Made by a program: the position numbers and the translations under genes. This document shows, in pieces, positions 979 through 33,207 of a DNA stretch of 64,000 bases. Origin of the DNA: Iphione sp. A-MEVVRFRX5 (taxonomy: Eukaryota); the NCBI GenBank assembly GCA_976226885.1, contig OZ320313.1, positions 130,882,001 through 130,946,000 of the forward strand, given 5' to 3'. The notes beneath the pieces were generated by a model. The model saw nothing but the letters and a program-made list of their open reading frames with translations. It was not told the origin of the DNA and did not search any database. Position 1 is the first letter of the stretch, and each line of letters opens with the position of its first letter.

Positions 979-1079
979 GGATACAAGAACATCTCACAGA
1001 TACATATCTTTAGGCCTTTACAATTACTCTATACATACAAGCAATGACATTCCTGAGTGTGAACATAGTGAGAAGTATA

Positions 1080-5903: not shown

Positions 5904-5905
5904 GT

Positions 5906-6033
5906 TGTAATATATTTGGATTTTACTTTGGTGAGAGAGAAACACAGGACACAACGCCATGCTGCTTCAGAACCGGAAGTGAATTTATTCATGAGTTCTG
6001 ATTGGTTGAAAATACAATCTCGCCGACATGACA
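5906..6033 (-). repeat. 5' LTR (128 bp)
   Basis: Direct repeat of 836-963; minus strand contains CCAAT and AATAAA (5989-5984). Confidence 0.97.
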
Positions 6034-6103: not shown

Positions 6104-6309
6104 CTCTCGCTGTACATATCTGTTGCTGCCGTCCTCCCTAACAAAAGCCATGACCTTGAAACCTGTGTCACCGTAACCTTCCTTAGTGAAGCGGAAGTTG
6201 AGGGGATCGTCGATTCTATCCGGGAAGACGTTCCACGAGGTTCCCTGGATGCCCTCGTAGATAAGCTGACGTCTCTGGTCGCCTTTCTCCCTGAGACAGC
6301 CAGCAATAC
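6104..6309 (-). CDS. Exon 27 (module 5; last exon visible in window)
   Basis: IAGCL...LNFRFTKEGYGDTGFKV...RYVQRE; donor GAG|GTATGT, phase 0. No further exon found in 1-835. Confidence 0.88.
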
Positions 6310-9300
6310 CTGGAGATAGGACCATGGGCACAGATACAACACGTGATACTCACACACACACACGCGCGCGCGCACGAGTACGCGAATACAAATCACAATG
6401 TGGACATTCCTAGTATTAAGAACATTTCGCTTGAGAACAAATACTTTCGAATCTAGTCTAAATAAAAGTCACAATGTGGACACAGAGGGAGTAAAGTAGG
6501 AGGTAATCAGAGAACAGGAAAAGAAAGAGGAGTAAGGTGAAGGACGCATGGAAAAGAAAGGGAGAGGGATGGAAGAGAGGAAGAGATGGCGTGGATGAGA
6601 AAGGAAAGATAACATGAATAATGGATAATGGTGGAAGGAGAGGAAAAGTTCCAGTCACAGCCTAGTTTTCTTGTTTCTTTCCCTCTTACAGCTTACACCT
6701 GTCGATTGTAAATCCGACATACCTATTGGACTGTCCTGACAGTTGCCTGCATTCAGTAAACCCAGGGCGCTGACGTACGTGGCGATGATGGTCTGCAGCA
6801 CAGACTCGTCCTGCCGCACCATGGCGGGGCTGAGGCGGTCGGAGGAGGCACATACGCGGGCATACTGGTCGTCAGCCAACGAGCTGTTTTCCAGCTTACA
6901 CTAAAGAACGACGAGTCATATTCACAGGGTTGGAGGAAAAGTCATGGTAATGCATAGCGTTAGTACACCTTCAGAATTTAACAGTGGTATATCAATATCA
7001 ACTAAAGCGAGCAAACCGCTGGCGAGACCAAAACTGGCAACGCAGTTCCTAGCTTGGTCTCTAGGCGTGTATCACAATACATATTAAAGAAAGCTTCTTT
7101 TCAAAAATATCTATGTTACAGATCATATAATCACATCTATTTCCGAACTAAATGTAAGGAAGTGTAAGACCTCATTCCAAAGCCATCCTCCTCTAAAGAC
7201 CACTTTCACTGAAGAAGATGTGGTGATCTTTCCAGAGAGGTTCTACTATTCACAATATTTCAGCTGGTGGAGCATAAGTTACTTGTCTTCATTAACAGTA
7301 ATTAAAACCAGTAGTTAAAAGACAGTGCTAGATACTCTACCTGGGATACTGAATTATGTTAAGGTAATTATAGGTGATCCCCAGCATCTTAAATAACTTC
7401 ACCTGTCTGTATAAGAACTGAATATGTTATAATTAGAAATATATTACAACCGATATTATAGAGGCAAGGTTACATCTGACAGGTGGCAGTTTCGGCATTT
7501 CTTACTGTAATCAGAGTAACTGATGTTTGCTTAACGGTGATTAACTGACCAGTCGCTGTGGAACTTGAAACTTGAAGGTTAAATTGGCCCATCGCTTGGG
7601 GGGATGGTTGAACATCGTCTGAGTACACTTGTCTCTGGGTAATATACCCACTAACACATTTCCCAGCTACATACCCTTGCTAAATGGTGAAGGGTTATTC
7701 ACAACTAGGAAATGTACAATGATATCAATGGCCTCAGCAGTCGAAGCCAACTGAAGATTGGACAATGTCAAAGCCTACCAGAGATACCTCATTTCTATCA
7801 CTCACTTGTAGGGAGAGCTGCCAGAACTCAACGAACCAGTCATCCGGGATATCGCCGTGGTTAGCCACGGTCAGACTCGTCACGTAGTCGATAAAGCCCT
7901 GCACTTGATCCTCCCTCAACTATACACAGGAGACACGAAGTTGATCAATGAACAGGGCGCAAATAGAATAAACGCATCGCTAGCGCTCTGCGCTATGAGG
8001 AAATAATTGCGACATCGCACTTGCAAGAAATAAACCATTAATACCTCAGCTTTGAGGTCCTTAGATGTTTGTTTTATTCATAGTCAGATGAATATACATA
8101 GTTTCACAGGGGCTTGGCAATTATTTTCACAGAATGAAGTAGACAAGTCAAGCTTCTCCAAACGTTATAGAATTGTCTGAATGTTAGTGTCTATATATAC
8201 ATGTACAAAGTTGAAGGCGTGTGTTTATCAGTGTACACCGACTCTTGTATTGGTGAGCTTCACCATGATGTACACGCACTGCGTAGATGTCGGGGGTTCG
8301 TCCAAGCCCCCAAGAGAAAAGTTTAGTAACACCCAATTATAATGGACCTGTATGTTTACGTGAAGTATGCAGCGTGTTTGGTGGCTGTGAATAGTCTCAC
8401 TATGTCACCATGCTGACGTGTGCTCATGTAACATGTTCAGCATGTAATAACTCAGTGTATAACCATAGCACCCATTGAAGCACAACAGAATAGGACAGCT
8501 GCAAATTTGAAAACACAGTATGTGCACACACTACATGCTATGTGCTACGCATGTGCAAGGAACAACTATGTTAGAATATTTGTTTTCAAAAGAACATGGC
8601 GAAAACACAGCGTTATGGCCATGTAAACAAGTGTACAGGAAAACTTAGCCTTAGCTCAGACTTTTTCATGGCTCGATTACCAAGATTCCACTCTTCATAC
8701 AAGTAGTATGTTATGATTCCTTATGGCAGACGTGGATACATACTCTTTGTGATACAGAAACAATCTTTTGTGACCACTGGAGGGACCAGCCGATTCTGGC
8801 CTTAATAGAGGGCTGTTTCTAAATATGTATTATATAATACTAGGACCAGTGATTGTCGCATGGAGTAACAATGTGAAAATGGTGGCAAAATGATGCTATG
8901 ATTGTTTAGATCTGCAGTGAGCAATGTGTCATAGGTCATGCATTATGATGTGGTTCAGCGATTAGTTAATTCTAGTTGAGTTTTCCTCAGGTTTAGTTGC
9001 GACTGTGTTGACCTACTAATGTATGACATGATGCGTGTACTCACTTTGAGACTGATGGCTCCATTCGCAGCCGACTCCACCCCTCTGGTGGTGGAGTCAC
9101 TCACTCCAGCCGTGGAGCTGAGGAAGATGAAGTTGTCCTCCAGGTTAAGGTCACGTGCTGCTTCCAGAAGAAGGCGAGTCTGCTCCTCGTTCGTGAACAA
9201 CACCACCGCTCTGGCACCTGATTTGGGGGAGAGGACAAAAAAACCCACATAAATTAACTTCCTGCTTACAGTAGAACCTCACCACCGGGGACACCCAAGC

Positions 9301-12300
9301 CAGGAGACATGTACGATGGGGACACTTTTGGCAGACAGAGGATCATACTTTGGCTATGCATAGTATCAACCAGGATTGTGAAGACTCCCAATTAACGTAG
9401 TTGCTCTCACCTTGTTGTTGGCTGAGATTTCGGAGCAGCTCCTGCGCCTGCGCGGCTGTGGCTCCCTCTGCTGGTAGAGTCAGACGCTGCCCTATGCAGA
9501 CATTTTTCTCTCCTGAGGAGTTGAAGAAGGCGGCCATGGCGCTGTTGGCTTCCTCTGTGTCGGAGTTGATGGCGCTGATGTAGTACCAGTCCAGCCTACG
9601 GGTCACCTCTGCCAGCACTTCAGCCTGCGAGAGATGTTGACCATTTTGTCATTAAAGTAGAAACCCGACCACATCACAGCAAAGACCAGACCAATAGAGA
9701 GATCATGATTTTTGAGAACGAGCCATTAATTAATGTCACTCCATAAAGGTGTTGTCTGATGAGAGTAAACTGTAGGAGAGGCCAAAATTGACAAGTCCCA
9801 AGCTTGGTACTAAACATGGGTTTCAACTGTATCTATAAACACAACGTAAAAAATCAGCTGTCTTTCGACTGTTCTATGTTGTCCTGAAGAAGTATAATTG
9901 CAGCTGTTACCAGGAATTGACAGACCAGAATAGCCCAATGTTTACTATGCTGAGGGACCTGTCCACGTTAGTCATTTAAGAATGCAAAAGCTAATGACTG
10001 AATAATACAGAAACACCTGTCATACTTCATCCTGTGAGACCACAACATTTACAGCATAAAAAGCAGTTCTGTGGACTGCCGAAGGTGAAAACCCCTTGGT
10101 TCTTGGCTGAAAGTACCCACGAGGTGGCCATGACCACATCATGGTCAAACAGTACAGTGGAGACCCGATTAAAGACCAGAGCTCATAAGAGATTGAATAG
10201 AGGCAGATACGAAATAATTCATTCTAAATAAGAATATGTCTACTGCAACCAAACCGTGTGTGAGACCAAAGTTGGCCAGCCCCAAGCTTTATACCTGTAC
10301 TAATTAGGTATACCACAGATATAAAGAGCTTCGTTCCGAGAACATTCTTTAATATAATGAAAGTATACCTGTACACACACGTCTTGTGTACTTGTACCTC
10401 TCGACTTACTTGCTTGCTGTCTGGCGGGATGGTGGAGAGGAAGTAGGGTTGTCCCGTCAGCCTGTCATCGCTGGAGGTGGGGCTAACAATGGTGACTCTC
10501 CTGGGTGAGAGGAGAGGGACCAAGACGGAAGAAGACGCCGATGCGTGGGGGATGAAGGCCACGATAGAGGAGGGGTCCACCTGGTGGCAATAAGCAAAAC
10601 CATTGCCTTTTAAAACAGACAATAGAATTTACTAGAGGGAATCCATGGAAATCCATGGACAACATATATTACTGCACTGACCGGGCGCATAGCAATGGCC
10701 ACAATGCTTATGTTAGAGGTGCTTATAATACAGCAGAAAACTGGTTGAATTTCAGTCGATACTTTGACTCAACGTATGGTAATATCTAACGTGAACATAT
10801 CAGATGTGTATTTGTTTATCCTTCTGTGACGGAATTTTTCAGATGACAAATGCATGTTTTAGAATATTACATCATACATGCAGCTAATGTAGTCGTCATT
10901 TTCATGCTAATCGAAGAAATGTAAGGCTTCATGTAGATATTTACCCGTCTATCGTATCTAGCATAATATGTGGAATTGCATACAGTTTTCCCAAATTCAC
11001 ACAGACACTGATCCATCTGCTTGCATCCTATGTATTACCTTACCAGGGCAAAGATGCCATCTTCCTCACACTGAATCTGACCCATCTGTCTAAACCCCAC
11101 CTGTGACCTACCCTAGCAGGGACACAATCTGCCTCACGTAGAAATTGACCTATGTCTAAACCCCAACCATGACCTACCCTAGCAGGGACACAATCTGCCT
11201 CACATAGACACTGACCTATCTGTCTAAACCCCAACCATGACGCACCTTAGCAGGGACATAATGTGCCTCACGTAGACACAGACCTATCTGGCTAAACCCA
11301 ACTGTGACCTACATGTACCTTAGCAGGGACACGATCTGCCTCATATAGAGACAGACCTATCTGTATAAAACCCAACTGTAACCTACCGTAGCAGAGACGC
11401 CATCTGCCTCACATAGACTCTGACCCATCAGCAAGCTGAAGGTATCTCGGGACACTCTCACGTCTGATCCACATGTGTCAATGGCCAGTCCACCCACATC
11501 TATGTTGTTAATGGTGCGATTAAACAGGTTCAAGGCATAGAAGAAAGCCAAAACATTCTGGAAGCCTGAGTCCGAGTTCAAAGGGCCACAACGCAGTGGC
11601 TCACGAGGATCAGGACCGTGTACATCAAAGAAGCCAACCAGGTTGAGGTTGGGACGAGTCCTTGCCATAGCGCGAGTGGGACGGTGGCCTGTGAGTTACC
11701 AATACAGAGGTCATACACAGAGCCCAACATAATAATACATGTATATATACATTTATATCGGTGGGACTGAAGCAACATTTTATCAAGACAAATATTTCGG
11801 TCCGTAATGTGGCAGAAGTATTGAACAATGTACATGTATATAATCTCATCCCAGGTGCTAACATCGGAGTTCACCACAACTACAGGTATGACAGTATCAG
11901 CGCCATAGCTGGTAGTGTGTTCTAACATGGCTGGGGGTGCGCCTCTTATCTTTTAACATTACCACAAGAATACGATGTGACATCGATGAGGAGGCTTCAT
12001 TCTCAGGCGACTCGTTAACACAGGTATACCTATATACATGATGGTATGCAGGTATACGTCGCTTAATGAAGTAGATGTATTCAATGAAGTCATTTTTTAT
12101 CAAAGGTTCACCATTACTGCACAATATTTAAGTGGATAGCTAGTAAAAACAGTTTGTATGTGTAGTACATGGTATATTTGGTTGCCTCCTTCAATCTGAT
12201 CAGTTCTTCTTGGAAGAGTTAATAGACATCAGCCTCAGGCCAGAAAGTACTTTTATAGAAAACACCTTTGTTATAAATGTGCTTCATTCGGATCATACAG

Positions 12301-12911
12301 GTAAAGGTGGTAAACTTTATTATAAAGATGTTTCACCCCTAAAGGGTTTCCAAATGGAGATATACCTGTGTAATGAACATGTATATTTACGTACCCAGTG
12401 TGGCACACTCCTGACAAGCTCCAGGTGATGAACAATCGGAGGACCATGTGATCTCGAACTCCTGGCGTGGTCGGATCTTGAGCAGGTGGGAGTCGTTGTA
12501 GCTGCCCACCTAAGAAGGAAGGCTCCTGTTAGACTTACTCTATACATGCACAAACACCTGGTCATCTCACGGGGGGAGGGGAGTCAGGGGTAAAACAATG
12601 TGATAATAACACACATAACTATTGGCGCTGAAATTACTAGAATCTGGATAACGATTGCTTTTAGAGGTATAGCGTCTGGCGTTAAGGCACGTTGTACCGA
12701 TCCAATGCTATAAAATAATAATCTGCCCTATCCTCTTTTGCAATATATGTGCCATGTATTTTAAACCAAGCAGACTTAGTTAAACATTAACTTCCTTACA
12801 ATCTCACTATGGAGTTTCATAATTCGTTGAGTCTTGTTTGTTTCTATGTCTGTCTCTATATATCTGTCCGTCGCTGCCTTTCTCTCTCTTCTTCTTTCTC
12901 CCTCCCTTACT

Positions 12912-12973
<62 letters not shown>

Positions 12974-15900
12974 ACTCTGTGTTACACTTACATTCTCATA
13001 ATAGAAGTTAGCACTGCCTAGTGGTCGACGGGCTGTGTAGATGTGGTAGCCTCGGTTACTCTCACCATCCGACGTGAACTGGAACTGTTGGTTGGTGGCG
13101 TCCCGGAAGGTGGCGCGCCGGATACCTTCCAGCATGAGCTGGCGGCGGTTCGCCGCATTCCGGAAGTTCTGACACACGCCATTATAGCTGTCACCGCATG
13201 TTTGCTGGAAAAGTATAATATACACATAACCTTAGCAAGGTAATTTTTGTCACTTAAACATATCTCGACGAACCACAGTCGGCTCACGCTTACCGAAGAC
13301 TCAATAATACGAATATGCTTTATATCCGAATGTCTTCTGAAGGAAACATTTTAATTTTAAACAAACAATTCAGTTTCTCATAAGCGAATAGGCCTTATAA
13401 CAAAACCACCTACAAAGAAACAGACTGTGCAAGTGTGTGCCAATATGAAAGTACAGTAATACTTCTCTCCAACGGTCACCTTTAGTTCCAGTTAGTTTAT
13501 GACCATTGCGGAGAGGTTGTTTAGAGTATGTAATATAGAAATCTGTTTCAATGCCATTTGGCCATAATGGGAGATGACCGCTTGAGAGGGATTACCGTTA
13601 GTAGAGCTCCTACTGTAGTACTTATGATACAGTAGGGACTCTCCCCAAGAGCTTGTCATCTTTGGTTCCAGTAAATTTACGACCATTAAGAGAGGTGACT
13701 ACAGGAGGGAAAGATTAGTGTGCAGACCCGTAGGCATGAATTTTTGTGGGTGGTATCAGAAATTAGAGAGGTGGACTCATGATTAGAAAAGTGGAACTCT
13801 GCCACTTTCTCTTCCTCTCTTTCCCTTTCCTTCTTCTCCTCTCTACCTGCCTCTCTCCTCCATGTCTCCTCCCAGTCGCTCTTTCCTCGTCCCACTGTTT
13901 CCCTCAGACAGACTGTCACCTAGCATATTAACTTTATAAAGAGACTGGGTGGAGCTAATTGCCTTTGTGGGGGGGGGGTAGTATTGGTCGATACCCCCAA
14001 TACCCCCTGGCTACCGGCCTGGTGTGTGTAAGCATACTGTTACAAAGACATATGGCCATACTAAGGCGGTGACCGCAGGAGAGGGCTGGCTATTAGAAAG
14101 GTTGATATTGTACATGCATATGCTAACAACAGTATTAGTAGAATATGTTGTGTACACCACTACTCAAGACTCACCCTGAGGGCATAGTCCAGACCAAGCG
14201 CTGCAGAGTACACCGCGTTTGTAGTGTAGAGGACGTAAGCATCCTGTGTGTATCCTGGTGCCCGCACAATGTCGCGCATGGGCAGTTCACAAGCAGTTCG
14301 AAACCTGGATGACCCCGGGGTCAGTGAACACCCATACACTTCCTCGTAATACTAAAAAGACAAGCTCTCTTATTAGTATATTTTAAGTAAATGCATATTC
14401 TGAATCGTGAATTTCTTACTGTATACATATGTCGCACACGTCTCTTTTTAAGACGGTAGGAGTTTGTGATTATTTCTAATAAGGGCAAGTTTATGGGGAT
14501 ACGTTTGGCATCATGGTTGGGTGCATGTAGAATGATTTAAATCTAAATGGTACAGTCATCAACTTTGGAGATGACATGACATTTCATGATGCTTCCAGTT
14601 GAAATATGAATGAAAACAGATCTATATTAATGACGATGATTCTATTGCTATCCTTACATCATATAAAAAAAGCAAATTGTGCCTATCAATTGAGCTGGAC
14701 GGATATTAAAACGATTAAAATTTAACTTTTTATCCTTTTGTTCTATGTCACTATATAACTCTCTGATGGAAGTTCTATTATGATATCACGAAAGGTAAAA
14801 ATAAAGGGCAATAACCTTCTTTATAGATTTAGTTTTGTGCCACAATATTTCTTTAAATTATTACTCCAATTTAACAACAGTTTATGCATAGATGTCTGAC
14901 ACTTAGGCCCCGTTTCCATTAATTTGGAAGCATGTATGTGCGTAGACATGTGTAGACATGCATATTTTTCAATCACACTGCCTTCATATTTTTAACCTCA
15001 AATTCGCTGCAGCCTCACACAACCTCATGCAACCTCGAAGGACACTCCTGTGCGTGAGGTTGCGTGGGGAAAAATGCATGGTCACGTACATGACACGCAC
15101 ATGCTTGCTTATGAATGGTACCAGCTTTATGTGAACTGGGCCTTAGTCAACATCATAGATGTACAGTGGAACCTCTCTACTATAAAACAGCAAAGGGACT
15201 GACCAAGACTGAGTATTTAAACATGATTATATAGATTTGGTTCTGTTTTCCAGTCTGTCCATAGTGGGGGGTGTCCTTTATAGAGGGTGTCCTTAGTAGA
15301 GGGGTTCCACTGTACTTTTAAGGCTCATAACTATAACTGGATATGTAGGGCTTATTAGCCCATTTTTCTTCCAATAAAAGTAAACGTATAAAAAATGTAA
15401 ATGTAAATTTAGCTTTAACACTCGCCTCCTCGAACCATGGGTTCGCCCTTTGTCCGGCAGGATTCCCTAGGTAGCGGTCAAACGTACTGAGGTCAGCAGT
15501 TTCCACGCCCAGAGTGAGCGCATCGGCGGCCACTCTGTTGACACCCTCAAGGAGGTCAAGGCGATTCGACCAGGTCTCTGACCCGACAAAATGGAACTGA
15601 ATATCCTGAAAGAAAAAGCAACAATAACATCCTCAATACACGGCATTACCCCATACTGGAGTTAGACCCGTAACCGACATATGCGTGTCCGTGTGCATGT
15701 GGGGGTATAGTAGATGCTCACCAATGCGACCAATCAACAATGTGGGCAACCCCATAGATATTACGAGAATATCTCAGACAAGAGGGAAACTCTACAATAA
15801 GGGCAAAAATTTGCAGTCCCAGTGGTAATAGCATTACAGGGCTTTTACTGTATACATATCTACCTGTGTGACACGTTCCACAGCCTTAAGGAAGGCGTTG

Positions 15901-18900: not shown

Positions 18901-19925
18901 ACCGTCCCTATAACTACCAATCAGCAGGGCCTCACCATTGGCGCCGTACCTGTAGAGGCCATAACCGCGGTCATGCTGCCTGTCCGAGAAGCGTAAGTTC
19001 ACTCCGGAGGGGTCAGTAAAGGTCACGTCCTGGAGCTTGTTCACGATGAGCTGGACGGAGTCTGGAGAGGATCGGAAGGCCTGACAAACGCCATTGTAGT
19101 TGATGCCACACCTGTAACATAGTTTGTTGAGTAGGTAAAATTAAATGGAGAATAAAATGGTACCTTTACAGATTACAGACTGTTATTGTAAATTGTATAG
19201 AAATAAGTTTTAAAATGTTGCATTGGTAAGAGTCTACAGTGGGACCTGGTAATAGGGTTTGCCCTTATTGTTAAGTGGTTGCATTGGTGAGCGTCTACTG
19301 TACTTCAATAACCCACCTCTCCCTCAGCGCTAGATGGATGGCCTCTACCAGGGCGTAGACAGCGTTGACGGTGGTGAGCACACGTGCGTCCTGCTGGTAG
19401 CTCGGTGCCCGTGTGATGGGCCGGCTGGTTACGTCCACACAGTTCCGCTCGTACCTCGAATTGCCAGGAAGGTTGCACTGGTAGAGTTCCTGTTATACGA
19501 GAGATCCAACATAGATTCATTTATTATGGAAAAATTACTGGGGCGCACTATTTTACATTTTTGCAGTGCTTTTCATTTATTAATGAAAATCCAGTGCAGC
19601 TGCTTCTTTTTCAGTGCCTTTACTAAAATATCACTTAAGATTGAAATGGTAATACCACCAACAAATAGTGCATGCCACAAGGCTTGCTCTGAATAATATT
19701 ATCAACCGCCTGCCGTCAACATTTGTTCCAGTCAATTTTTGACCATTGCGTGAGGTGACTCCTGGAGATATGTACATATAGTTTAGTTACACTACACTTA
19801 TAAAACGGCTGCCAGAAGTAGGCCCCATGCGTTCTAATCACTGTGCATGCCTGAACATTTTAGGGCCAATCACCAAGCTGTTGACAGAAGGGTTTAGATG
19901 AGGGTTAGTATCAGATTACCATTTG

Positions 19926-19969
<44 letters not shown>

Positions 19970-25900: not shown

Positions 25901-28900
25901 AGGCGGCCGAGCAACTCAACCACGGCCCGCAGGCCCGTCTCCTTCCCCGGGAGCAGCTCGGTAAAGAGCGGGAAGGCGACCCGATCGGAGAGCGCGGCGG
26001 GAGTGGGGAGGTAGCCGAGCTGAGGGAGAGGAATCCGACCTAATAAAGATGCTATCGCCATGGTGCTAGCGTCTTGGCCCGCCGCCGCGTAGCCTACCAC
26101 CGTGCGAGGGTCGGCTCCTCCAGGGTCGGTCCTTCCATGGAGGAAGTTCACCAGCGCATTATTGGCGATGTCGGCGCTCCCACAGTCATCCCAAGCGATC
26201 GCCCCAAGATTAACCCTTCCCGGCCAGAGGTTCTGATCCCGCGCGTACGTCAGACCGTATAGGAAAGCCTCAATCAGCTCAGCCCCACCGCCCTGTAGGT
26301 CGATCGGCCCACAGGAGAAGGCGGGCGAGCCGGGCAGGCGGACAGAGAACACGCCGCCTAACAACACGCTCCCCGCTACGTGCACCGGCCGGCCGCTGGG
26401 GGCGCCACCGGACAGACATGAGCGACACCCAGTGCTTGGGCACCGAGACTCCGGAAGTGACGTCAGAGGCAGCGTTCGGCTGGGGTTGTACATCCGGATC
26501 AAGTTCTTGTTGAGGTTGAGTGTGCCATCACGGAAGGTTCCGACCTACAAAGTATAAAGGAGGCGATAAGTTTATGTTAGTAATTATATTAGCCAAAATT
26601 TCCATGTGCAGTGCTTTCTGTCTGTGTTCTCCTGAAAGAGAGATGTTATATTTCTTTTGCTGCAACAAGTTCCAATCAAAGCAATACTGTATCTGTGTTG
26701 TTTCAGAAGAACAAAGATAGAAATCACAGGCAGATGGAAATAGTTTTTGTGCATAAATGATGGTCACTACGGGGATGCTGGACATACCGTGGGGGCTGGA
26801 CAGGGTGAAAGATCTCTTTTCAATGGAGAGAAATAGGAGTCAGTTGAATCTTTTCGATGGAAAGAAATCGGAGTCAGTTGAATGACAGCAATGCTTGCCC
26901 CCCCCCCTCATCCTTAGCAACCACACTTCTGCTATGGGGTCTATTAACCTACCCGCTGTAAGCGGTAGCTGCCCTGTCTGTTGTTGTAGTTATATACGGC
27001 ATAGCTGAGGTCGGCGGCCTCCCCACCGCGCGTAAAACGCACTCGCCGCGCCGATAGTTCCGGTTGAGTGGTTGTGGAGGCCAAGGTCGACACACGGTCG
27101 TCAGAACCGAAGGTGAAGTCCACCGGCAGGAGATACTTCCGGTAGAAATCCTCGGATGACATGCGCAGGAATGAGGGGCACAAGCCACGTGACTGACCGC
27201 GACAAAGATCGGCGCGCGCATCGCGGACGGCGCGGGCAACGGCAAAGACAGCGACAACAGCGCTCTCTACCGCCTGCGCTTGCTGGAAGTTGGTACGGCG
27301 CTGAGAGTCTGACATCTGAGGACAGGGAGGGTAGCTGTTGTAGGGTGTGGACGTCACACCTGCGAGAAACAATACCTTCATGTACTGACATGATAAAGGT
27401 AAAAATGAGACCCTTATATACACATGACATGACACCTGGGAGAGCACATTAGACAACCTTCATACATTTACCAACGAGAATAAGAAATAGGCCATGGACG
27501 TGTATGGTTTCTCAGCAATAGAGACCAAGCTTCTGAACTAGGTTTGAGCTATTTTGAGTTGTACTTTCTACAATGGCATGCTTAGAGAAAAAAACGTCGG
27601 GTATACATGCATATTTGTACATGTATTTGGTGGGTAATCTTCAGAATCTGTTGCATTTCCGATTCGCATTCTTTCGTGAGTCTTTCCTCCAATCAAAAAT
27701 CACAGCAGGTTGGAACATGCTAATGATAGATAAGACCTTTGGTCACTACATATAACCTATGTGGATTCAGGAGTGTCTTGGTGAGCTCTGCTACTTACAT
27801 GAGTTCTGTCAAACACTAGACTGTAGTTACATGATAGCGAAAAATATAAATGGTGCATAGTAAACTCACTGGTGGAACCTCAATTTTACCCCCGCTACCC
27901 CCCCCCCCATATATACATGTATATAATTAACAAAAGCTAATGGGTCAGTTAGATTAACGGTGCATAGTTCACTCACCAGGTAGGCGGCAGCGATTGGTGG
28001 TCATATACCACTCCGAGTACCAGGGATTGTCTGTCGGGGGGCTGTTGGCGCTCAGCCTCACCCAATGGTCCTCAAACTCCCGAATCTGCCGGCTTGCTGC
28101 CGCCATGGTCAAAACTCCACGAGCGTAAGGTCTACAGTTTAGGGGAAGGAGTTCAAGTTAGGAGTTAGACATAGAAAGGCCAATAATCGAAACTCACTTC
28201 AACTACTGCCATACATCTCTTCATAACACCCAGAAACACACAGGGACTGTCATAATAAACACCCAGGGGCTGTCATAATACACACCGAGGGATTGTCATA
28301 ATACAGAGCCACCACAGGTATACCGCTCTTCACAACGCAGAGACATATAGGGACTGTCATAATGAAGAGCACCTGTCGTAACCGAGTACATTTGTTCCTT
28401 GAAAGTCAGTAAATTTGAACCTGATACTGTGACTGAAAATTATTAAAGGGAACACATAGAACCTGAGCTAAACTAGTTCCTCTAACGAGGGATAATCTAT
28501 TTCGCCCCTCTCTTTCTTTCCATCTCCCTCCCTGCCTGCCCCTTTATCTCTCCCTCCCTCTCGCTTTCTATCTCTCTCTCTCTCCCCCTCTCTCTCTCCC
28601 TCCTCGTCGGCCTACCTCAGTACTCACTCAGTTACTCTTTACAGCTAACCACTTAATCCGGTATTCAACAAACGCTTCGCTCCTACAAGTATCTCTGTAG
28701 CTCACCTCCCCTGTATGATAGAAAGGTCTGTTCCGACGCTCTCAGGTAGCACCCACTGTAAACGGCCGGAGTTTGCCACGCTGGACCCCATGTCCATCAG
28801 AAGGGCAGCAGACGCCGCGTCTCCCAGGAAGACGACGGCAGTCGCCGGTCCCGCCACCAGGGTACGCACGGCATCCCGGTAGATGGTCTCTGCAAGAGAG

Positions 28901-31900
28901 TTAGAAGCTCATGTACAACATAAATACCCAAATGCAAAGGGACTAATTTCCATGAACCAGATTCATTTTTCAATGAAACTACACAAGAGTCCGTATATAT
29001 TTAGGGTTCGCCCCAACCGCGATTCCTTTAGGTATGACTATCATATTCACCCGAAGTTACCTCAAAGAGCCTGGCTGTTAGCTGTAACGATGGTAGACCT
29101 AGTCTCCAGTTGGATAGTCTGGCCAGCACAGTACTATTGTAAGCATTTGCCATCGATAGTCACGTTATTGTCATCATCATAATTTATAGTTGCTGTGAAT
29201 GATAAGATTATCAACAATAACTAATACATACATGTTAACGTCCACTGAAAGAAATTTCTGTACTTACCTGACATGCCGCCACCTGGCAGATGAACAGCCT
29301 GTCTCAAATATACACCAGCATTGTTTCTATACGTACCTGAGGTGGCCCCATCTGGCAAGTGGACAGTCACACAAACACCAACAGAAACCTCAGGCGGCTC
29401 TATCTGGCAGCTGGACTGAAGACTGAAACAAACACCAGCATTCTTTTTGTGCTTATCTGGTTACCTGTGTTTACCTTACCTTACCTTGTGGCTCAATCTG
29501 GCATGCAGAAAGCCTGACACAAACGGGCACCAGCATGATTTCTGTATTTACCTGAGGTAGCTCCATCTGGCAGGCGGACGGCCTGACTCACACAGACACC
29601 AGCATTGCCAGCGCCCTCTGTAAGGGACGCCAAGCCATGGCGGCCATATTCGCTGTCCGTGTAAGCCACTGCCACGTTAGTCCAGCCCATCGCCGCTAGG
29701 GTCGCCAGCAGCGCCTAGTTATCACGAAACAAAATGGACAGGTTTTCATGAGACATTAAGGATGATTTAACGCGTGATTTACATACTGATCATCAAGATT
29801 AATATGCACCTTTTTACGGCCCTCAAGCTGGTGTGAAAGGTCTCCTATTCCCGGCCTTCACAGAAAATACAGTATGACACAAAATCTGTGACATTTTTTA
29901 TGATACCTTACGAAACCCTGGCAATGTTTCCCTCACATTTAGCAAGCTTAAAGCGTCCATAACTGATAAACCTTTTGTGAAATTTGAAGGGTATATATCA
30001 ATCAAAAATATCAAGGATCAAATAGATTGAAAGTTATATGGACAACAAGGCCTCAAGAGACGGTCAAACCTAAGGAAAGGTATGACAGAGTAAGGACAGA
30101 CGCATTGGCGGACCTTTGTACCGGTCCCGGGAGATGATACCTACCTGGGTCTGGAAGGTCTGGGAGGGCACGGTCCTCACCACGTACGGGAAGTCGTCCG
30201 TGTCAGCCAGAGCGGGCGAGGTGGAGGCGAAGTGGACGGAGGGGATCTGGTAGCGACCCAGGACATCGGACACCTGGCGGGCCACCATCCCCCGAGCGTT
30301 GGTCAGCACCCCTACCATGACAGCAAAATAGATGTTTTATGTATGTATACATATGCCATTTCTTATCATGGATAAAATTCATGTCACTCTGTCAATCCCC
30401 GTAAGTTCGGTCTCTGTGTCCAAGGAGATTATCATTCATGTTCGGGATTCAAAGATGCCGATAGCAGTGTTGTTCGATTCCGGCAGGGGGAGAGAATCAA
30501 ATTTCAAATTTTCAAATTTTCAGACAGCATAATTCACAGACTCAGGCAGCAAATATTCCACGCCCCCGCTAGAAGGTTAGCTTCTCTACGGCCTTGCACC
30601 CAGGATATTACCACTTACCGACCATAGCTGTGGACACATTGCTTGCGCAGCGCTGTTCAGAGGTGCCCAGCTCAGGGAGGATGTTGATTAGACTGTCGAT
30701 GGCCACTTCCGGTCTCTGGCAGGTGTCCTCCATCAGCACACCTACAGGAATGATGTTTAAGTTTTGTGGAGACTTTCATCGTTTATGAGGTTACTTTTAC
30801 TCAAACAATGTTATATTCTTGGTCAAAATCAATCCAGACTGCGTCGGCATACATTGGGTTACTTTCACTTAAAGTAAATGTTATACTTTCACAAATACAC
30901 ATACGCACACACTGTCACCATACATCTGCTTACTTCCAAATAGACACTGCCAACGTATTCAGACACTGCAATAATATTTTACTTAGCCAGCATCGCCATA
31001 TGTCAGGTTACTTCACTATGACACTGTCATAGTACATCTGCTTACCTTCAAATAGACATTGCCATCATACATTGGGTTACATTCATTCAAACAGTGTCAA
31101 CGTAGAGTTACCTTCACTCAGATACTATCCCCCTACATCAGCTTATTTTTTTTCAGACACTGTCATCATGATTATGTGTCTGGTTGCCTCCACTCAGACA
31201 GTGTTATCATACACCGGCTTTCTCCCACTCAGACAGTGTTATTGTACATTCATATACATGTACAATGTATTTTGTTACTTTCAGTAAGAATGGGCTTGAT
31301 TGCTAACATCTGGCTATGGCTGGTCACCTCCTCACAGTAAAAATCTTGGGCACTTTTTCCAGCATACTGTCATGATAAACATTGTTACACAGCCATAATA
31401 CACTTGAGATTTTTTCATCAGACATCACACTTGTTCATAGATCTTTTATTGCAGATTGCAGGAATGGATATACATTGTACATCAAGTGCATTATCCTATT
31501 CGATACAACGCAGTGGCAAAGGTGAGGGTTATGTGAGATCGAGAATGTAGGGTATGGGGTGTGGAAATTAGCTTAGTGCTTTACGATTTCAGTCAATGAT
31601 TAGAATTGCAGAATCTATTCAATGTTTTGTCGTACAACTTCAAACATGGTGTGCATAGACATTTGCCATGTAAATTTATTATTTACTGGCTTAACACTCT
31701 GATTATATCAATGAATATCGGAAACAGTTTGTTGGCCTCTGCCATAACGGCGAGCAACTCGCAGGATCGGTTCCAAACATTATTGACCGACAGCCATAAA
31801 AAGACTGAAAATGGTGCGTCCATCCAAACCCCTCTAATGTACAATCTCCCCCCCCCCCCGTCCAGTTGACTGATCACTGGATGGTCGAAAACACCACTGC

Positions 31901-33207
31901 AAAATAACATTTTATGCTTTTCCGACTGAAAAACACTGTGTTGTTGCTGGGTGGTTGGCACTCGGGCAAAAGGTCAATTATGCCCTATATCCCCTGACCC
32001 TAATCTGCTCTGTGCTAACAATATGAGGATAATTGCTATTAGACAACTGCAGAGGGCCTAGGGGTTGACCTAAGAGAATACAGTGTGTGTCTGTACCTAC
32101 CTAGTTTTACCCCTGGTATGTAGGAGTCGGTGATCCGCCGGCCGTTGATTGTACCGCTGTCTTGGTTGATCGTGTCAACTGCCCAGCGAATAGCCTCATA
32201 TTCTTGCATGCCCCCTAGTGACAAGGAAAAACAGTCAGAAGACAACTGTGAAAAATGCTGCATGTGTGTATGTCAGTGACAATCTACCTGATCACAAAAA
32301 CTAATATTAAAGCAGGGAGTTTACGACATCTTGTCTGATATTCTCGTTAAGGTTCCCCATTTCTCTTCCTTATATTCTGCTGATGTTTCTAATCAACAAA
32401 AACAGTATTCAACACAAGCTGTTGTAAGGTAACATCAAATGACACTTTTAAAAACGAACAGGTCATGATATGAACAAGAACAGAATTAAGAATAGTTCAC
32501 CAAAGAACAATTACTGCATGGTCTACAGTAGAACCTTAGTATTGGGGCCCCAGAACATGGGAGAGATTTTCTTGGAACCATGGCTGTTGTCGTTAATTTA
32601 TGTACCTCTCAGATGTGGGGACACCCCCTGAACGGGTGCACATTCATTGGGAAGGAAGGGGGTCCCCAGATACAAGGTTCTTCTGTGTGCAGGAATACCT
32701 CTCTAAATGAAGCCTCTGATAACAGAGCTCCTTTATACGTGTAATGAAATTGGCTATTTTGACAGTCTCGTGACCCATGACCACTGTCCATTTATCGTTT
32801 TAACGGTAACAACTGAAAATGGAAGGGTCATATAGAGACACATGTATACTTTTACCATGAAAAATGATTCATTAACAAATATTTACTCAGGAACAATGCT
32901 AATTCACACTGAAATGGTGTTGCTCTTATAATGAAGTTGCTCACAACAAAACACAGGGGAATAACTGTATAAATGTAATTTGCCCACCTGTAGATGGGCC
33001 TCCGCAGCCATAGTTGTCTCCTCCTTGCTCGCTCAGGGAGAGTAGCCCCCCGACCAGGACCTGAGCCGACCCCCCGCCTACCACGGCCGACCGTTTACTA
33101 CCACACACCTCCTGGCGCACTGGTCCCCCGCCCGCTACACACGTGACCTCCAACAGCAAGGTCACCGTCACCAGCAACAGCACCATCACTGACGTGGGTG
33201 ACGTCAT
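6104..33207 (-). CDS. Multi-exon gene (27 coding exons in window, 3'-incomplete): class C GPCR-like protein with signal peptide and at least 5 tandem Venus flytrap (ANF_receptor/PBP1 mGluR-like) modules, at least 2454 aa
   Basis: All 27 exons have AG acceptors and GT (two GC) donors with matching phases, total 7362 nt. Each module repeats mGluR/CaSR VFT hallmarks: GLFxVH, C, EAFxxA, GGxxxDxC, RTVPxD, W.YV, NPWF.E.....C, NAVY, F...G....Y. Confidence 0.9.
6723..6900 (-). CDS. Exon 26 (module 5)
   Basis: CKLENSS...RVC...DESVLQTIIATY...NCQDSPIG; phases 0/1. Confidence 0.88.
7806..7919 (-). CDS. Exon 25 (module 5)
   Basis: LREDQVQGFIDYVTSL...DDWFVEFWQLSLQ; phases 0/0. Confidence 0.9.
9045..9217 (-). 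CDS. Exon 24 (module 5)
   Basis: ARAVVLFTNEEQTRLLLEAA...FIFLSS...ANGAISLK; phases 1/0. Confidence 0.9.
9411..9624 (-). CDS. Exon 23 (module 5)
   Basis: AEVLAEVTRRLDWYYISAINS...VCIGQ...NLSQQQG; phases 0/1. Confidence 0.9.
10410..10580 (-). CDS. Exon 22 (module 5)
   Basis: VDPSSIVAFI...PYFLSTIPPDSKQ; phases 0/0. Confidence 0.88.
11035..11430 (-). repeat. Tandem array (about 6 units of 62-75 bp) derived from the 3' end and donor site of exon 21
   Basis: Unit ACCTACCCTAGCAGGGACACAATCTGCCTCACATAGACACTGACCTATCTGTCTAAACCCCAACC aligns with the last ~45 nt of the exon plus the intron start. Confidence 0.9.
11387..11688 (-). CDS. Exon 21 (start of module 5)
   Basis: HRPTRAMARTRPNLNLVGFFDVH...LRCG...GGLAIDTC...LCEADGVSAT; phases 1/0. 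Confidence 0.88.
12395..12509 (-). CDS. Exon 20 (end of module 4, linker 4)
   Basis: VGSYNDSHLLKIRPRQEFEITWSSDCSSPGACQECATLG; phases 0/1. Confidence 0.88.
12905..12975. repeat. (CT)n microsatellite
   Basis: Long CT run. Confidence 0.95.
12992..13204 (-). CDS. Exon 19 (module 4)
   Basis: QTCGDSYNGVCQNF...FQFTSDGESNRGYHIY...YYEN; phases 0/0. Confidence 0.9.
13454..13615. mobile_element. Degenerate Tc1/mariner-type MITE
   Basis: TA|CAGTA...TACTG|TA ends; imperfect TIRs. Confidence 0.4.
13723..14021 (+). mobile_element. CAGG-TIR mini-element, copy A (degenerate, 299 bp)
   Basis: CAGACCCGTAGGCA...GATACCCCCAATACCCCCTGGCTACCGGCCTG; same ends and internal AGAGGTGGAACTC motif as copy B. Confidence 0.7.
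14175..14351 (-). CDS. Exon 18 (module 4)
   Basis: YYEEVYGCSL...AC...DAYVLYTTNAVYSAALGLDYALR; phases 0/0. Not in the ORF track. Confidence 0.9.
14906..15142. mobile_element. PIF/Harbinger-type MITE
   Basis: TTA|GGCCCCGTTTC...GAACTGGGCC|TTA (TTA TSD) with internal inverted blocks. Confidence 0.7.
15164..15312. mobile_element. Tc1/mariner-type MITE (149 bp)
   Basis: TA TSD; TIRs CAGTGGAACCTCTCTACT / AGTAGAGGGGTTCCACTG (17/18 match). Confidence 0.85.
15426..15605 (-). CDS. Exon 17 (module 4)
   Basis: DIQFHFVGSETWS...FDRYL...NPWFEE; GC donor GAG|GCGAGT; phases 0/0. Confidence 0.87.
15864..16115 (-). CDS. Exon 16 (module 4)
   Basis: VVHSPGTYGDDAARQF...ICVAQ...VVVTF...AVERVTQ; phases 0/0. Confidence 0.9.
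16739..16987 (-). CDS. Exon 15 (module 4)
   Basis: SGNTRINPDNIEVYVGAYDSDTS...PQLSYGATS...YPNFLRTVPADD...EYVQ; phases 0/0 require the acceptor at 16988, not the one 4 nt further in. Confidence 0.9.
17279..17662 (+). mobile_element. CAGG-TIR mini-element, copy B (384 bp)
   Basis: 14-bp TIR CAGGCCCGTAGCCA/TGGCTACGGGCCTG flanked by the 6-bp direct repeat GATTTC; interior has duplicated AGAGGTGGAACTCC and C/T tracts. Confidence 0.85.
17834..18078 (-). CDS. Exon 14 (module 4)
   Basis: LFDVHASGNGPFTCG...VEAFNFALGRVN...GGVALDTCSSP...LLPLT; phases 1/0. Confidence 0.92.
18100..18250. repeat. (TATG)n-like microsatellite
   Basis: GTAT/ATGT repeats; a second patch lies at about 18445-18510. Confidence 0.85.
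18759..19111 (-). CDS. Exon 13 (end of module 3, linker 3, start of module 4)
   Basis: CGINYNGVCQAF...IGSYRDG...SDCPGVCTQC...PGSVLLAG; phases 2/1. Confidence 0.92.
19317..19489 (-). CDS. Exon 12 (module 3)
   Basis: ELYQCNLPG...NC...DARVLTTVNAVYALVEAIHLALRER; phases 0/2. Confidence 0.9.
19995..20066 (+). mobile_element. CAGG-TIR mini-element, copy C (72-bp minimal core)
   Basis: CAGGCCCGTAGCCAGG...GGGGGTATCGGACGATACCCC...TGGCTACGGGC flanked by the 6-bp direct repeat AACCAG. Confidence 0.85.
21402..22009 (-). CDS. Exon 11 (module 3)
   Basis: WLMYTSG...YPTFYRTVPSDDKQAMAMARFVDYMGWRYV...NPWFNEAYQ; phases 1/0. Confidence 0.92.
23573..24041 (-). CDS. Exon 10 (linker 2, start of module 3)
   Basis: IGDVQY...SCSGAPVCPDC...DGDLLLAGLFNVH...LDDCSSPLRA...DIKG; phases 0/1. 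Confidence 0.92.
25108..26544 (-). CDS. Exon 9 (1437 bp; linker 1 plus essentially all of VFT module 2)
   Basis: VGTFRDG...SRCPSTGCRSC...GGVFSVR...NPWLKQWYEAAFSC...YDILYRAPGANTFTM; ends at a GC donor (ATG|GCAAGT); phases 0/0. Confidence 0.88.
26953..27359 (-). CDS. Exon 8 (module 1)
   Basis: GVTSTPYNSYPPCPQ...AVVAVFAVARA...LCRGQSRGLC...YAVYNYNNRQGSYRLQR; phases 1/0. Confidence 0.88.
27977..28131 (-). CDS. Exon 7 (module 1)
   Basis: PYARGVLTMAAASRQIREFEDHW...DNPWYSEWYMTTNRCRLP; phases 2/1. Confidence 0.88.
28706..28889 (-). CDS. Exon 6 (module 1)
   Basis: ETIYRDAVRTLVAGPATAVVFLG...LQWVLPESVGTDLSIIQGR; phases 1/2. Confidence 0.85.
29261..29610 (-). repeat. Tandem degenerate copies (about 5) of the 3' end and donor of exon 5
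   Basis: TACCTGAGG..CCATCTGGCA...ACACCAGCATT recurs at about 29265, 29334, 29386, 29480 and in the exon itself. Confidence 0.8.
29552..29714 (-). CDS. Exon 5 (module 1)
   Basis: ALLATLAAMGWTNVAVAYTDSEYGRHG...VCVSQAVRLPDGATS; phases 0/1. Confidence 0.9.
30145..30311 (-). CDS. Exon 4 (module 1)
   Basis: VLTNARG...QIPSVHFASTSPALADTDDFPYVVRTVPSQTFQTQ; phases 1/0. Confidence 0.9.
30619..30741 (-). CDS. Exon 3 (module 1)
   Basis: GVLMEDTCQRPEVAIDSLINILPELGTSEQRCASNVSTAMVG; |GTAAGT donor, phases 1/1. Not in the ORF track. Confidence 0.88.
30790..31440. repeat. Degenerate ~35-bp minisatellite in intron 2
   Basis: Recurring (G)TTACTT(T)CAC..CAGACACTGTCATCATACAT motif. Confidence 0.65.
32101..32214 (-). 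CDS. Exon 2 (module 1)
   Basis: GGMQEYEAIRWAVDTINQDSG...IPGVKLG; TAG| acceptor, |GTAGGT donor, phases 1/1. Confidence 0.9.
32988..33207 (-). CDS. Exon 1 (signal peptide, start of VFT module 1)
   Basis: MTSPTSVMVLLLVTVTLLLEVTCVAG...VLVGGLLSL...YGCGGPST; donor G|GTGGGC, phase 1. An upstream acceptor at about 33240 implies a 5'UTR intron. Confidence 0.85.

What the first reader, a model, noticed from the sequence alone, without database searches (positions are those of the whole stretch)
9045..32214. Ligand-pocket residues differ module by module; none keeps the glutamate-specific arginine
Manual alignment to rat mGlu1 contact positions (R78, S165, T188, D208, Y236, D318, K409). M4 keeps the full alpha-amino-acid set (YDSD, GATS, VPAD, TYG, GSET). 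M3 nearly does (YTSG, SASS, VPSD, VYG, ASER) and has Arg at the K409 site (DARV). M1 loses S165 and D208 (ARGM, VPSQ). M5 loses the Y236 and D318 equivalents (EEAN, SSTA). M2 is the most degenerate. The R78 position is E, L, Y, L and N in M1-M5. Inference: not a glutamate receptor; M3 and M4 may bind different L-amino acids, while M1, M2 and M5 may be structural, allosteric or bind other ligands.
Basis: partly seen in the sequence, partly recalled or inferred. Interest (0 to 1): 0.72.

Follow-up and report, generated by a model that had tools for sequence, protein, structure and literature searches.

The report
Five-flytrap receptor, two intact pockets
The window holds most of a gene for an unusual glutamate-family (class C) receptor with five ligand-binding "Venus flytrap" domains in a row, and only the third and fourth keep the residues that grip an amino acid, a pattern a related species shares, so these two are probably the sensing modules.

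Summary
A 27-exon minus-strand gene (33207-6104) encodes a signal peptide and five mGluR/CaSR-like flytrap (VFT) modules.

At the mGlu1 sites R78/S165/T188/D208/Y236/D318/K409 the modules read:
- M1: E/G/T/Q/Y/E/A
- M2: L/D/T/K/A/(T or L)/Y
- M3: Y/S/S/D/Y/E/R
- M4: L/S/T/D/Y/E/Y
- M5: N/S/S/D/E/T/S

A multiple alignment and direct alignments to solved mGlu2, mGlu3 and CaSR chains support them.

New evidence:
- A complete orthologue in a related genome has 5 VFTs plus a 7TM domain (2798 aa). Its M3 and M4 match the window at all seven sites, while M1, M2 and M5 differ and are degenerate.
- M4 is the most conserved module (73% identity against 52-56%).
- Each module position is an old clade across molluscs, nemerteans, a brachiopod and a flatworm. 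Tubulanus keeps the core motif in all five, so the degeneration is lineage-specific.
- Degenerate M2 still models as a VFT.
- A loop cysteine is invariant in M1 and M5 only.
- No 7TM lies in the window; a young LTR element follows the last M5 exon.

Ligands are untested. All named relatives are annotated as uncharacterized or hypothetical, and no paper was found. Two first-reader notes on this same stretch exist.

The parts
6104..33207 (-). Partial coding region of a 5xVFT class C receptor gene. It has 27 exons: signal peptide plus modules M1-M5. The 3' part (linker and 7TM) is not in the window.
   Evidence: Collinear hmmsearch chain against a full-length profile of six orthologues, profile positions 4-2449. 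Splice junctions were chosen by profile score, with GT-AG at 24 and GC-AG at 2. The translation is stop-free. Exons, high to low: 33207-32988, 32214-32101, 30741-30619, 30311-30145, 29714-29552, 28889-28706, 28131-27977, 27359-26953, 26544-25108, 24041-23573, 22009-21402, 19489-19317, 19111-18759, 18078-17834, 16987-16739, 16115-15864, 15605-15426, 14351-14175, 13204-12992, 12509-12395, 11688-11387, 10580-10410, 9624-9411, 9217-9045, 7919-7806, 6900-6723, 6309-6104.
26443..33207 (-). Module M1 (residues 1-545, 8 exons): signal peptide plus a VFT with a degenerate pocket (E78, G160, T183, Q203, Y231, E312, A405).
   Evidence: Codons: 32203-32201, 30291-30289, 30222-30220, 30162-30160, 29648-29646, 28743-28741, 27273-27271. 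The relative's M1 differs at 7 of 11 pocket sites.
23940..26442 (-). Module M2 (residues 546-1024), encoded almost wholly by the single exon 26544-25108. Its pocket is the most degenerate (L601, D669, T692, K712, A740, non-acidic at the D318 site, Y914).
   Evidence: Pfam ANF_receptor E=7e-12. AlphaFold2 model pLDDT 85.8, pTM 0.85. Best PDB matches are mGlu VFTs, E about 1e-26, TM 0.66-0.80. It has the longest stem branch of the five modules in the module tree.
18844..23939 (-). Module M3 (residues 1025-1496, 4 exons). The core amino-acid motif is kept (S1153, S1176, D1196, Y1224, E1302). The distal pocket has Y1079 and R1385.
   Evidence: Codons: 23777-23775, 21992-21990, 21923-21921, 21863-21861, 21779-21777, 21545-21543, 19384-19382. 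All seven sites are identical in the relative.
12435..18843 (-). Module M4 (residues 1497-1988, 7 exons). The full core motif is kept (S1626, T1649, D1669, Y1697, E1783). The distal pocket has L1550, Y1872 and R1788.
   Evidence: Codons: 18004-18002, 16930-16928, 16861-16859, 16801-16799, 16094-16092, 15578-15576, 14237-14235, and 15563-15561 for R1788. It is 73% identical to the relative against 52-56% for the other modules, with dN 0.20 against 0.37-0.43. 11/11 pocket sites are identical. Leu at the R78 site in the M4 of all ten 5-VFT receptors aligned, plus Lingula, Octopus and Macrostomum.
6104..12434 (-). Module M5 (residues 1989-2454, 7 exons), the membrane-proximal VFT. Its pocket lacks the Y236 and D318 equivalents (N2046, S2116, S2139, D2156, E2184, T2266, S2359).
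   Evidence: Codons: 11557-11555, 10541-10539, 10472-10470, 10421-10419, 9552-9550, 9113-9111, 6804-6802. Only 3/11 pocket sites are shared with the relative.
30647..30649 (-). Loop cysteine C143 of M1, in the loop that in the eel mGlu4-like reference also holds a Cys.
   Evidence: Invariant in M1 of all 10 species aligned and absent from every M2, M3 and M4.
11411..11413 (-). Loop cysteine C2094 of M5, in the same loop position.
   Evidence: Invariant in M5 of all 10 species aligned.
831..6033 (-). Ty3/gypsy-type LTR retroelement inserted in the intron 70 bp downstream of the last M5 exon.
   Evidence: The 1343-aa ORF 1080-5111 has protease, RVT_1, RNase H and integrase domains. It is flanked by 133-nt direct repeats at 831-963 and 5901-6033, 98% identical.

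Best explanation
The stretch is the extracellular part of a class C (glutamate-family) GPCR gene whose ectodomain has five tandem Venus-flytrap modules instead of one. Short three-cysteine linkers join the modules.

Shown:
- The five-module chain is one gene.
- Its orthologues in a related genome and in nemerteans and molluscs end in a 7tm_3 domain and have no NCD3G cysteine-rich domain.
- In this lineage only M3 and M4 keep the conserved set that holds the alpha-amino and alpha-carboxyl groups of an amino acid in mGluR and CaSR (Ser/Thr, Ser/Thr, Asp, Tyr, Glu).
- No module has the Arg/Lys pair that binds the glutamate side chain.

Inferred:
- M3 and M4 are the orthosteric sensors for two different L-amino acids or amino-acid-like ligands. 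M4 has a hydrophobic/aromatic distal pocket (Leu, Tyr) that recalls CaSR. M3 has Tyr plus Arg.
- M1, M2 and M5 no longer bind amino acids in the canonical way but are kept as folded, selected domains.
- M5 is attached to the 7TM and, like M1, carries the invariant loop cysteine. It probably forms the disulfide-linked dimer that turns upstream clamshell closure into 7TM rearrangement. This would resemble the non-binding VFTs of GABA-B GB2 or T1R3, but in cis.
- The ancestral lophotrochozoan receptor probably had five competent pockets, and lineages have since silenced different ones.
For: - One gene: collinear exon chain and stop-free model. The orthologous locus in a related genome (ENA ERZ25767047 contig) gives a complete 33-exon, 2798-aa protein with signal peptide, 5 VFTs, a short Cys-containing linker and 7TM.
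- Architecture in relatives: P0002, P0003 and P0006 each have five ANF_receptor stretches plus 7tm_3. No NCD3G was found in four orthologues at E<=1, while the eel mGlu4 control gives NCD3G at E=3e-15.
- Pocket residues.
- Constraint: M3 and M4 pockets are identical between the window and the relative at all 7 sites, and at 9/11 and 11/11 extended sites (P=0.06 and 0.03 against the module background). M1, M2 and M5 give 4/11, 6/11 and 3/11. M4 has half the dN of the other modules.
- Motif retention across ten 5-VFT receptors: the core-5 motif is complete in 6 M3 and 5 M4, against 3 M1, 2 M2 and 3 M5. Tubulanus keeps it in all five.
- Module orthology: each position is a clade with SH-aLRT 94-100.
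- M2 keeps the VFT fold.
- The loop Cys is invariant in M1 and M5 only.
- Roles of R78 and K409 versus CaSR W70 and I416, and of S147/S170/Y218/E297: PMC4928972. S165A and T188A reduce glutamate binding: PMC5372683.
Against: - No ligand, expression or signalling data exist for any member.
- No sequencing run was listed for the window, so splicing and transcription of this copy are unverified.
- The 7TM is not in the window, and a young LTR element sits in the following intron. This copy could therefore be truncated.
- M3 keeps Arg at the K409 site and M4 keeps Arg at the R323 site, so acidic ligands are not excluded.
- Some species have degenerate M3 or M4 (for example P0002 M4, P0009 M4, and gastropod M3 at 3 of 5). 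'M3/M4 are the sensors' therefore holds for this lineage, not for the whole family.
- The two-module AlphaFold2 model gives confident domains but pTM 0.58 and a linker with pLDDT below 50. It shows no defined route for transmitting closure from M4 to M5.
- The equivalence of the loop Cys to the mGluR/CaSR intersubunit disulfide rests on alignment of a variable loop.
- The binomial support is modest (P about 0.03-0.06).
Confidence: 0.6

Rival explanations
1. True multi-sensor. All five modules bind ligands. M1, M2 and M5 have re-tooled their clefts for non-amino-acid ligands (cations, anions, peptides, nucleotides, other metabolites), and the receptor integrates up to five signals.
For: M1, M2 and M5 are under purifying selection overall (52-56% identity at saturated dS). 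M2 keeps a confident VFT fold. The bacterial BvgS family has one to five tandem VFTs, and its authors propose that these integrate several chemical signals (PMC4352136).
Against: The cleft residues of M1 and M5 are less conserved between the window and its relative than the rest of each module (4/11 and 3/11 against a 54-56% background). That is the opposite of what a conserved new binding site predicts. M2 is at background level (6/11).
Confidence: 0.2
2. The motif in M3 and M4 is retained for structural or hinge reasons. The receptor is not an amino-acid sensor at all. It could be an adhesion-like, mechanosensitive or protein-binding receptor, or constitutively active with the VFT chain as a spacer.
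For: No functional data exist. Chelicerate 4-VFT relatives (Limulus, P0111) have no module with the full motif, so family members can exist without a canonical pocket.
Against: The five core residues face the ligand in solved mGluR and CaSR structures, and mutating them changes ligand binding rather than folding. They are lost freely in M1, M2 and M5 without loss of the fold, so the fold does not require them. Their joint retention in M3 and M4 therefore points to ligand binding.
Confidence: 0.1
3. The window's copy is no longer a receptor. The LTR insertion after M5 truncates the transcript, giving a secreted five-VFT protein or a young pseudogene. In that case the pocket pattern is a legacy of the ancestral gene.
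For: No 7TM-like sequence lies anywhere in the window. An LTR element with an intact 1343-aa ORF and 98% identical LTRs lies 70 bp past the last M5 exon on the same strand. No RNA run was listed.
Against: 2,454 codons over 27 kb have no stop or frame break, and splice sites are conserved with the relative. The insertion is intronic, and only about 830 bp of the intron beyond it is in the window, while the relative's intron is 1.6 kb. The 7TM exons are therefore simply expected outside the window.
Confidence: 0.1

Closest known systems
CaSR / GPRC6A / T1R / fish OlfC type class C amino-acid sensors
   Same: The VFT has the conserved alpha-amino-acid set. M3 and M4 have Ser, Ser/Thr, Asp, Tyr and a Glu at the CaSR E297 position. 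They lack the basic R78/K409 pair, which CaSR replaces with W70 and I416. M4 has Leu and Tyr there.
   Different: There are five VFTs in one chain instead of one. Orthologues have no NCD3G cysteine-rich domain before the 7TM. Three of the five clefts are degenerate. No ligand is known.
Metabotropic glutamate receptors (mGlu1-8)
   Same: They are the best sequence and fold matches. mGlu2, mGlu3 and CaSR chains top the PDB sequence searches, and mGlu VFTs top the Foldseek search for M2. Module starts resemble the mGluR N-terminus ('GD..L.GLF.VH', conserved Cys pair).
   Different: No module pairs a basic residue at the R78 site with a Lys at the K409 site, in any of ten species. The modules form their own clade outside four canonical mGluR-like references.
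GABA-B heterodimer (GB1 binds, GB2 does not) and T1R3
   Same: Labour is divided between ligand-binding and non-binding VFTs. GABA-B also has no cysteine-rich domain (PMC12716839). The membrane-proximal M5 has a degenerate cleft, like a transducing, non-binding VFT.
   Different: Here the binding and non-binding VFTs are fused in cis on one polypeptide. Sequence affinity is to mGluR and CaSR, not to GABA-B.
BvgS-family bacterial sensor kinases with tandem VFTs
   Same: One to five periplasmic VFTs lie in tandem ahead of the membrane. The domains have unequal roles: VFT1 is open and mobile, VFT2 is closed without ligand. Integration of several signals has been proposed (PMC4352136).
   Different: BvgS is bacterial, uses a different periplasmic-binding-protein subclass, and outputs through a histidine kinase rather than a 7TM/G protein. 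The resemblance is by analogy, not homology of architecture.

Membership tests
Class C (glutamate-family) GPCR | Extracellular ANF_receptor / Venus-flytrap domain | tested here: met
   Pfam ANF_receptor on window exons. There are five collinear modules. The M2 model matches mGlu VFTs.
Class C (glutamate-family) GPCR | 7tm_3 heptahelical domain on the same polypeptide | tested here: inconclusive
   Absent from the window. Present in the complete orthologue of the related genome and in P0002, P0003, P0004 and P0006. The window ends about 830 bp past an LTR insertion in the intron after M5.
mGluR/CaSR/T1R subgroup architecture (ANF + NCD3G + 7TM) | Nine-cysteine NCD3G domain between VFT and 7TM | tested here: not met
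   No NCD3G at E<=1 in four orthologues. The eel mGlu4-like control gives E=3.3e-15. The relative's linker has only three Cys.
mGluR/CaSR/T1R subgroup architecture (ANF + NCD3G + 7TM) | A single VFT per protomer | tested here: not met
   Five VFTs in the window, the relative and lophotrochozoan orthologues. Four in Saccoglossus, a crinoid and Limulus.
Glutamate-binding mGluR | Basic pair equivalent to mGlu1 R78 and K409 that holds the gamma-carboxylate | tested here: not met
   The R78 site is E, L, Y, L, N and the K409 site is A, Y, R, Y, S in M1-M5.
Class C alpha-amino-acid-binding VFT | Core set equivalent to mGlu1 S165, T188, D208, Y236, D318 (CaSR S147, S170, D190, Y218, E297) | tested here: met
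   Met in M3 (S, S, D, Y, E) and M4 (S, T, D, Y, E). Not met in M1 (G, T, Q, Y, E), M2 (D, T, K, A, non-acidic) or M5 (S, S, D, E, T).
Class C alpha-amino-acid-binding VFT | Measured binding of an L-amino acid | not testable with these tools
   This needs protein biochemistry or a cell assay.

The most novel reading that the evidence does not exclude
Multi-flytrap class C GPCRs are an ancient, overlooked bilaterian receptor class. They have five modules in lophotrochozoans and four in hemichordates, echinoderms and chelicerates, and no counterpart turned up among the vertebrate and insect hits examined here (the Polypterus multi-ANF entries were not followed up). Ligand-binding VFTs (here M3 and M4) and silenced VFTs are wired in series on one chain. 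A ligand-independent, disulfide-dimerised proximal VFT (M5) acts as the transducer to a 7TM without a cysteine-rich domain. Different lineages have silenced different pockets of an ancestrally five-pocket receptor, so the receptor computes on several ligands in cis.
Probability: 0.35. Interest if true: 0.85.

Novelty: new variant of a known kind. Interest (0 to 1): 0.68.

Why it matters
Current descriptions treat the metazoan class C ectodomain as stereotyped: one ANF domain, with or without NCD3G (PMC12716839). All mechanistic models of class C activation rest on a single VFT dimer sitting on the 7TM.

A conserved receptor with five VFTs in series asks a new question. Only two internal VFTs keep an amino-acid pocket, and the membrane-proximal one is degenerate. 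How does clamshell closure two or three domains away from the membrane reach the 7TM?

The system also offers natural 'binding' and 'non-binding' VFTs in cis, with lineage-specific silencing as ready-made mutants. The family spans molluscs (including a schistosome-vector snail and farmed bivalves), nemerteans, brachiopods and flatworms, with 4-VFT relatives in deuterostomes and chelicerates. Every named member is annotated only as 'uncharacterized' or 'hypothetical'.

The M3 and M4 result makes the ligand question directly testable with isolated domains.

Tried and rejected
- Sequencing-run look-ups for the window, on a 6.1-kb stretch and on the M2 exon alone: none was listed. Read laying was therefore not used, and splice junctions and expression of this copy remain unverified.
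- A PDB sequence search with the 59-aa M4 exon carrying the K409 site found nothing. That site is assigned through the near-identical motif in M3 ('QDARVL' against 'QDAYVL') and the multiple alignment.
- Per-module dN/dS between the window and its relative: dS is saturated (1.7 to infinity), so only dN and identity are interpretable.
- A two-module (M4-M5, Tubulanus) AlphaFold2 model was meant to show whether neighbouring VFTs pack rigidly. Domains are confident, but pTM is 0.58 and the linker pLDDT is below 50. The alignment was shallow and staggered. It says nothing firm about geometry.
No coordinates are returned, so pocket geometry could not be measured.
- Five literature searches for tandem or multiple VFT class C receptors found no description of this architecture in animals. 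Absence from this library is not proof.
- A phage-database search with the retroelement ORF was irrelevant and blank.
- Rejected: that the modules are a tandem array of separate genes. There is no 7TM or signal peptide between modules, splice phases are continuous, and full-length single ORFs exist in orthologues.
- Rejected: that M2 is a decaying remnant. It is 52% identical to the relative at saturated dS, and its fold is confident.
Full report
**What is in the window**

Open segments there carry ANF_receptor (Venus flytrap, VFT) similarity. The best solved-structure relatives of one large exon are CaSR and mGlu2/3 (E about 1e-22).

A HMMER search of the single-exon module M2 against 1.84 billion representatives returned proteins of about 2,790-2,870 aa with five matched stretches. 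Pfam shows five ANF_receptor domains followed by 7tm_3 in these proteins.

A profile of six such proteins picks out 27 collinear pieces on the window's minus strand. They cover profile positions 4-2449 without gaps or inversions. Choosing splice sites by profile score gives canonical junctions almost everywhere. The result is a stop-free model of 2,454 codons running 33207-6104. It starts with a signal peptide and has five VFT modules, each beginning at a short C-x-C-x2-C linker.

Two donors are GC rather than GT, after 25108 and after 15426. The relative has GT donors at the same protein positions, which supports their placement.

**Check of the observation**

I aligned the five window modules with the modules of eight full-length relatives and four canonical class C VFTs, one of them an eel mGlu4-like receptor.

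| Module | R78 | S165 | T188 | D208 | Y236 | D318 | K409 |
|---|---|---|---|---|---|---|---|
| M1 | E | G | T | Q | Y | E | A |
| M2 | L | D | T | K | A | non-acidic | Y |
| M3 | Y | S | S | D | Y | E | R |
| M4 | L | S | T | D | Y | E | Y |
| M5 | N | S | S | D | E | T | S |

Independent pairwise HMMER alignments of single exons to solved chains agree:
- M3 Ser pairs with CaSR S147 and mGlu2 S145, and M3 Glu with CaSR E297.
- M3 Tyr and M4 Leu sit opposite the Arg of mGlu2 'GIQRLEAM'.
- M3 Arg sits opposite the Lys of mGlu3 'EQESKIMF'.

The meaning of these sites is taken from papers, not memory:
- R78, S164, S165, S186 and T188 bond to glutamate, and S165A and T188A reduce binding (PMC5372683).
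- CaSR holds the amino-acid backbone with S147, A168, S170 and Y218.
- R78 and K409 of mGluR1 hold the side-chain carboxylate and are replaced by W70 and I416 in CaSR (PMC4928972).

The 'D318' residue kept in M3 and M4 is a Glu, as in CaSR.

The best hit to M2 (52% identity) lies on a 1.3-Mb contig of ENA assembly ERZ25767047. I fetched 31 kb around it. The same procedure yields a complete 33-exon gene of 2,798 aa: signal peptide, five VFTs, a short three-Cys linker, 7TM and a short tail. This supports the expectation that the window's gene is also a receptor whose 3' exons lie off the window.

Module identities between the two species are 54, 52, 55, 73 and 56% for M1-M5. dS is saturated, so dN/dS is not usable. 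dN is 0.20 for M4 against 0.37-0.43 for the others.

At the seven reader sites, M3 and M4 are identical in the two species. For an extended set of 11 cleft positions:

| Module | Cleft sites identical | Module background identity |
|---|---|---|
| M1 | 4/11 | 54% |
| M2 | 6/11 | 52% |
| M3 | 9/11 | 55% |
| M4 | 11/11 | 73% |
| M5 | 3/11 | 56% |

So the clefts of M3 and M4 are held more tightly than their modules. Those of M1 and M5 are held less tightly, and M2 is at background. All five modules remain under purifying selection.

**Family context**

Named relatives are all 'uncharacterized' or 'hypothetical':
- Tubulanus polymorphus (nemertean).
- Sinanodonta and Argopecten (bivalves).
- Physella, Babylonia and Bulinus (gastropods).
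- Octopus, Lingula (brachiopod) and Macrostomum (flatworm).
- Four-VFT receptors in Saccoglossus (hemichordate), Anneissia (crinoid) and Limulus.

Several full-length ORFs sit on Logan contigs of 8.6-10.2 kb with no introns. I take this as inferred evidence that full-length mRNAs exist.

In maximum-likelihood trees each module position M1-M5 is a clade (SH-aLRT 94-100) that includes the brachiopod, flatworm and octopus modules. The five-module order therefore predates these phyla. The 4-VFT deuterostome and chelicerate modules attach near M1, near M5 or at the base of the M2-M5 group.

Across ten 5-VFT receptors the core five-residue motif is complete in 3 M1, 2 M2, 6 M3, 5 M4 and 3 M5. Tubulanus has it in all five modules, and Sinanodonta in M2-M5. 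Each module clade contains members with the full motif, so the ancestral receptor most likely had five competent pockets. The silencing of M1, M2 and M5 seen here is lineage-specific. Leu at the R78 site is found in the M4 of all ten.

No module of any species pairs a basic residue at the R78 site with a Lys at the K409 site.

**Further anatomy**

- No NCD3G domain is detectable between M5 and the 7TM in four orthologues, while the control mGlu4 scores E=3e-15.
- A Cys lies in the loop that also holds a Cys in the eel mGlu4-like reference. From general knowledge, this loop carries the intersubunit disulfide of mGluR and CaSR. This Cys is invariant in M1 and M5 of all ten species and absent from every M2, M3 and M4.
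- Window M2, despite its ruined pocket and the longest stem branch, models confidently as a VFT (pLDDT 85.8, pTM 0.85). Its best PDB matches are mGlu VFTs (E about 1e-26, TM 0.66-0.80).
- A two-module model (Tubulanus M4-M5) has confident domains but a disordered linker and pTM 0.58. No packing can be inferred from it.

**Mechanism proposed (inference)**

M3 and M4 close on two different amino-acid-type ligands. M1, M2 and M5 are retained as structural or allosteric domains. M5, fused to the 7TM and probably disulfide-dimerised, transduces without binding, as GB2 or T1R3 do in trans. BvgS-family kinases, with one to five tandem VFTs of unequal roles, are the nearest known analogy (PMC4352136).

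Three rival readings are scored separately: five real sensors, no amino-acid sensing at all, and a truncated copy.

**Limits**

- No 7TM lies in the window. An LTR element spans 831-6033, with 133-nt LTRs 98% identical and an intact 1343-aa pol ORF. It sits 70 bp past the last M5 exon.
- No sequencing runs were listed.
- Ligands, dimerisation and coupling are untested.
- Literature searches found no description of multi-VFT class C receptors in animals. A recent survey describes the metazoan architecture as stereotyped.
- Two first-reader notes on this same stretch exist, one on the five modules and one on the tri-Cys linker. I confirmed the first directly and the second in part.

Noticed in passing
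window 831-6033 (minus strand): Ty3/gypsy-type LTR retroelement with an uninterrupted 1343-aa gag-pol-like ORF (1080-5111) and 133-nt LTRs 98% identical. It is inserted on the same strand as the receptor gene, 70 bp downstream of the donor of the last M5 exon. It looks young and could affect 3' processing of the receptor transcript.
   Followed up: partly
window 25108-26544 (minus) and L001 9800-11215: Module M2 is encoded by one 1.4-kb exon in both the window and the related genome, and M3 by only 4 exons. M1, M4 and M5 have 7-8 exons each. M2 also has the longest stem branch (0.67 against 0.29-0.39). This is possibly intron loss through a cDNA-mediated event in the common ancestor.
   Followed up: partly
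window 25107-25102 and 15425-15420 (minus strand): Two predicted GC-AG introns (donors GCAAGT and GCGAGT). The related genome has GT donors at the same protein positions.
   Followed up: partly
window 53176-55595 (plus strand): Fragments of a non-LTR retrotransposon: endonuclease (Exo_endo_phos_2) ORF 53176-53952 and reverse transcriptase (RVT_1 plus DUF6451) ORF 54621-55595.
   Followed up: no
proteins P0055, P0085, P0092, P0035: A set of roughly 1,080-1,130-aa proteins with two ANF_receptor domains and no 7tm_3 hit. They may be a separate two-flytrap family without a membrane domain, or truncated gene models. Their sources were not looked up.
   Followed up: no
proteins P0041, P0068, P0139 (Polypterus senegalus 'CASR protein, partial'): Fish entries of 2,496-3,171 aa with 5-7 ANF stretches. 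They are probably run-together predictions across a tandem array of CaSR/OlfC-like genes rather than true multi-VFT receptors. This was not examined.
   Followed up: no
Saccoglossus P0013 988-1465 and crinoid P0016 967-1435: In both deuterostome 4-VFT receptors only the third module keeps the full S-T-D-Y-D/E motif. 'One or two live pockets among several silenced ones' may be a general rule of the family.
   Followed up: partly
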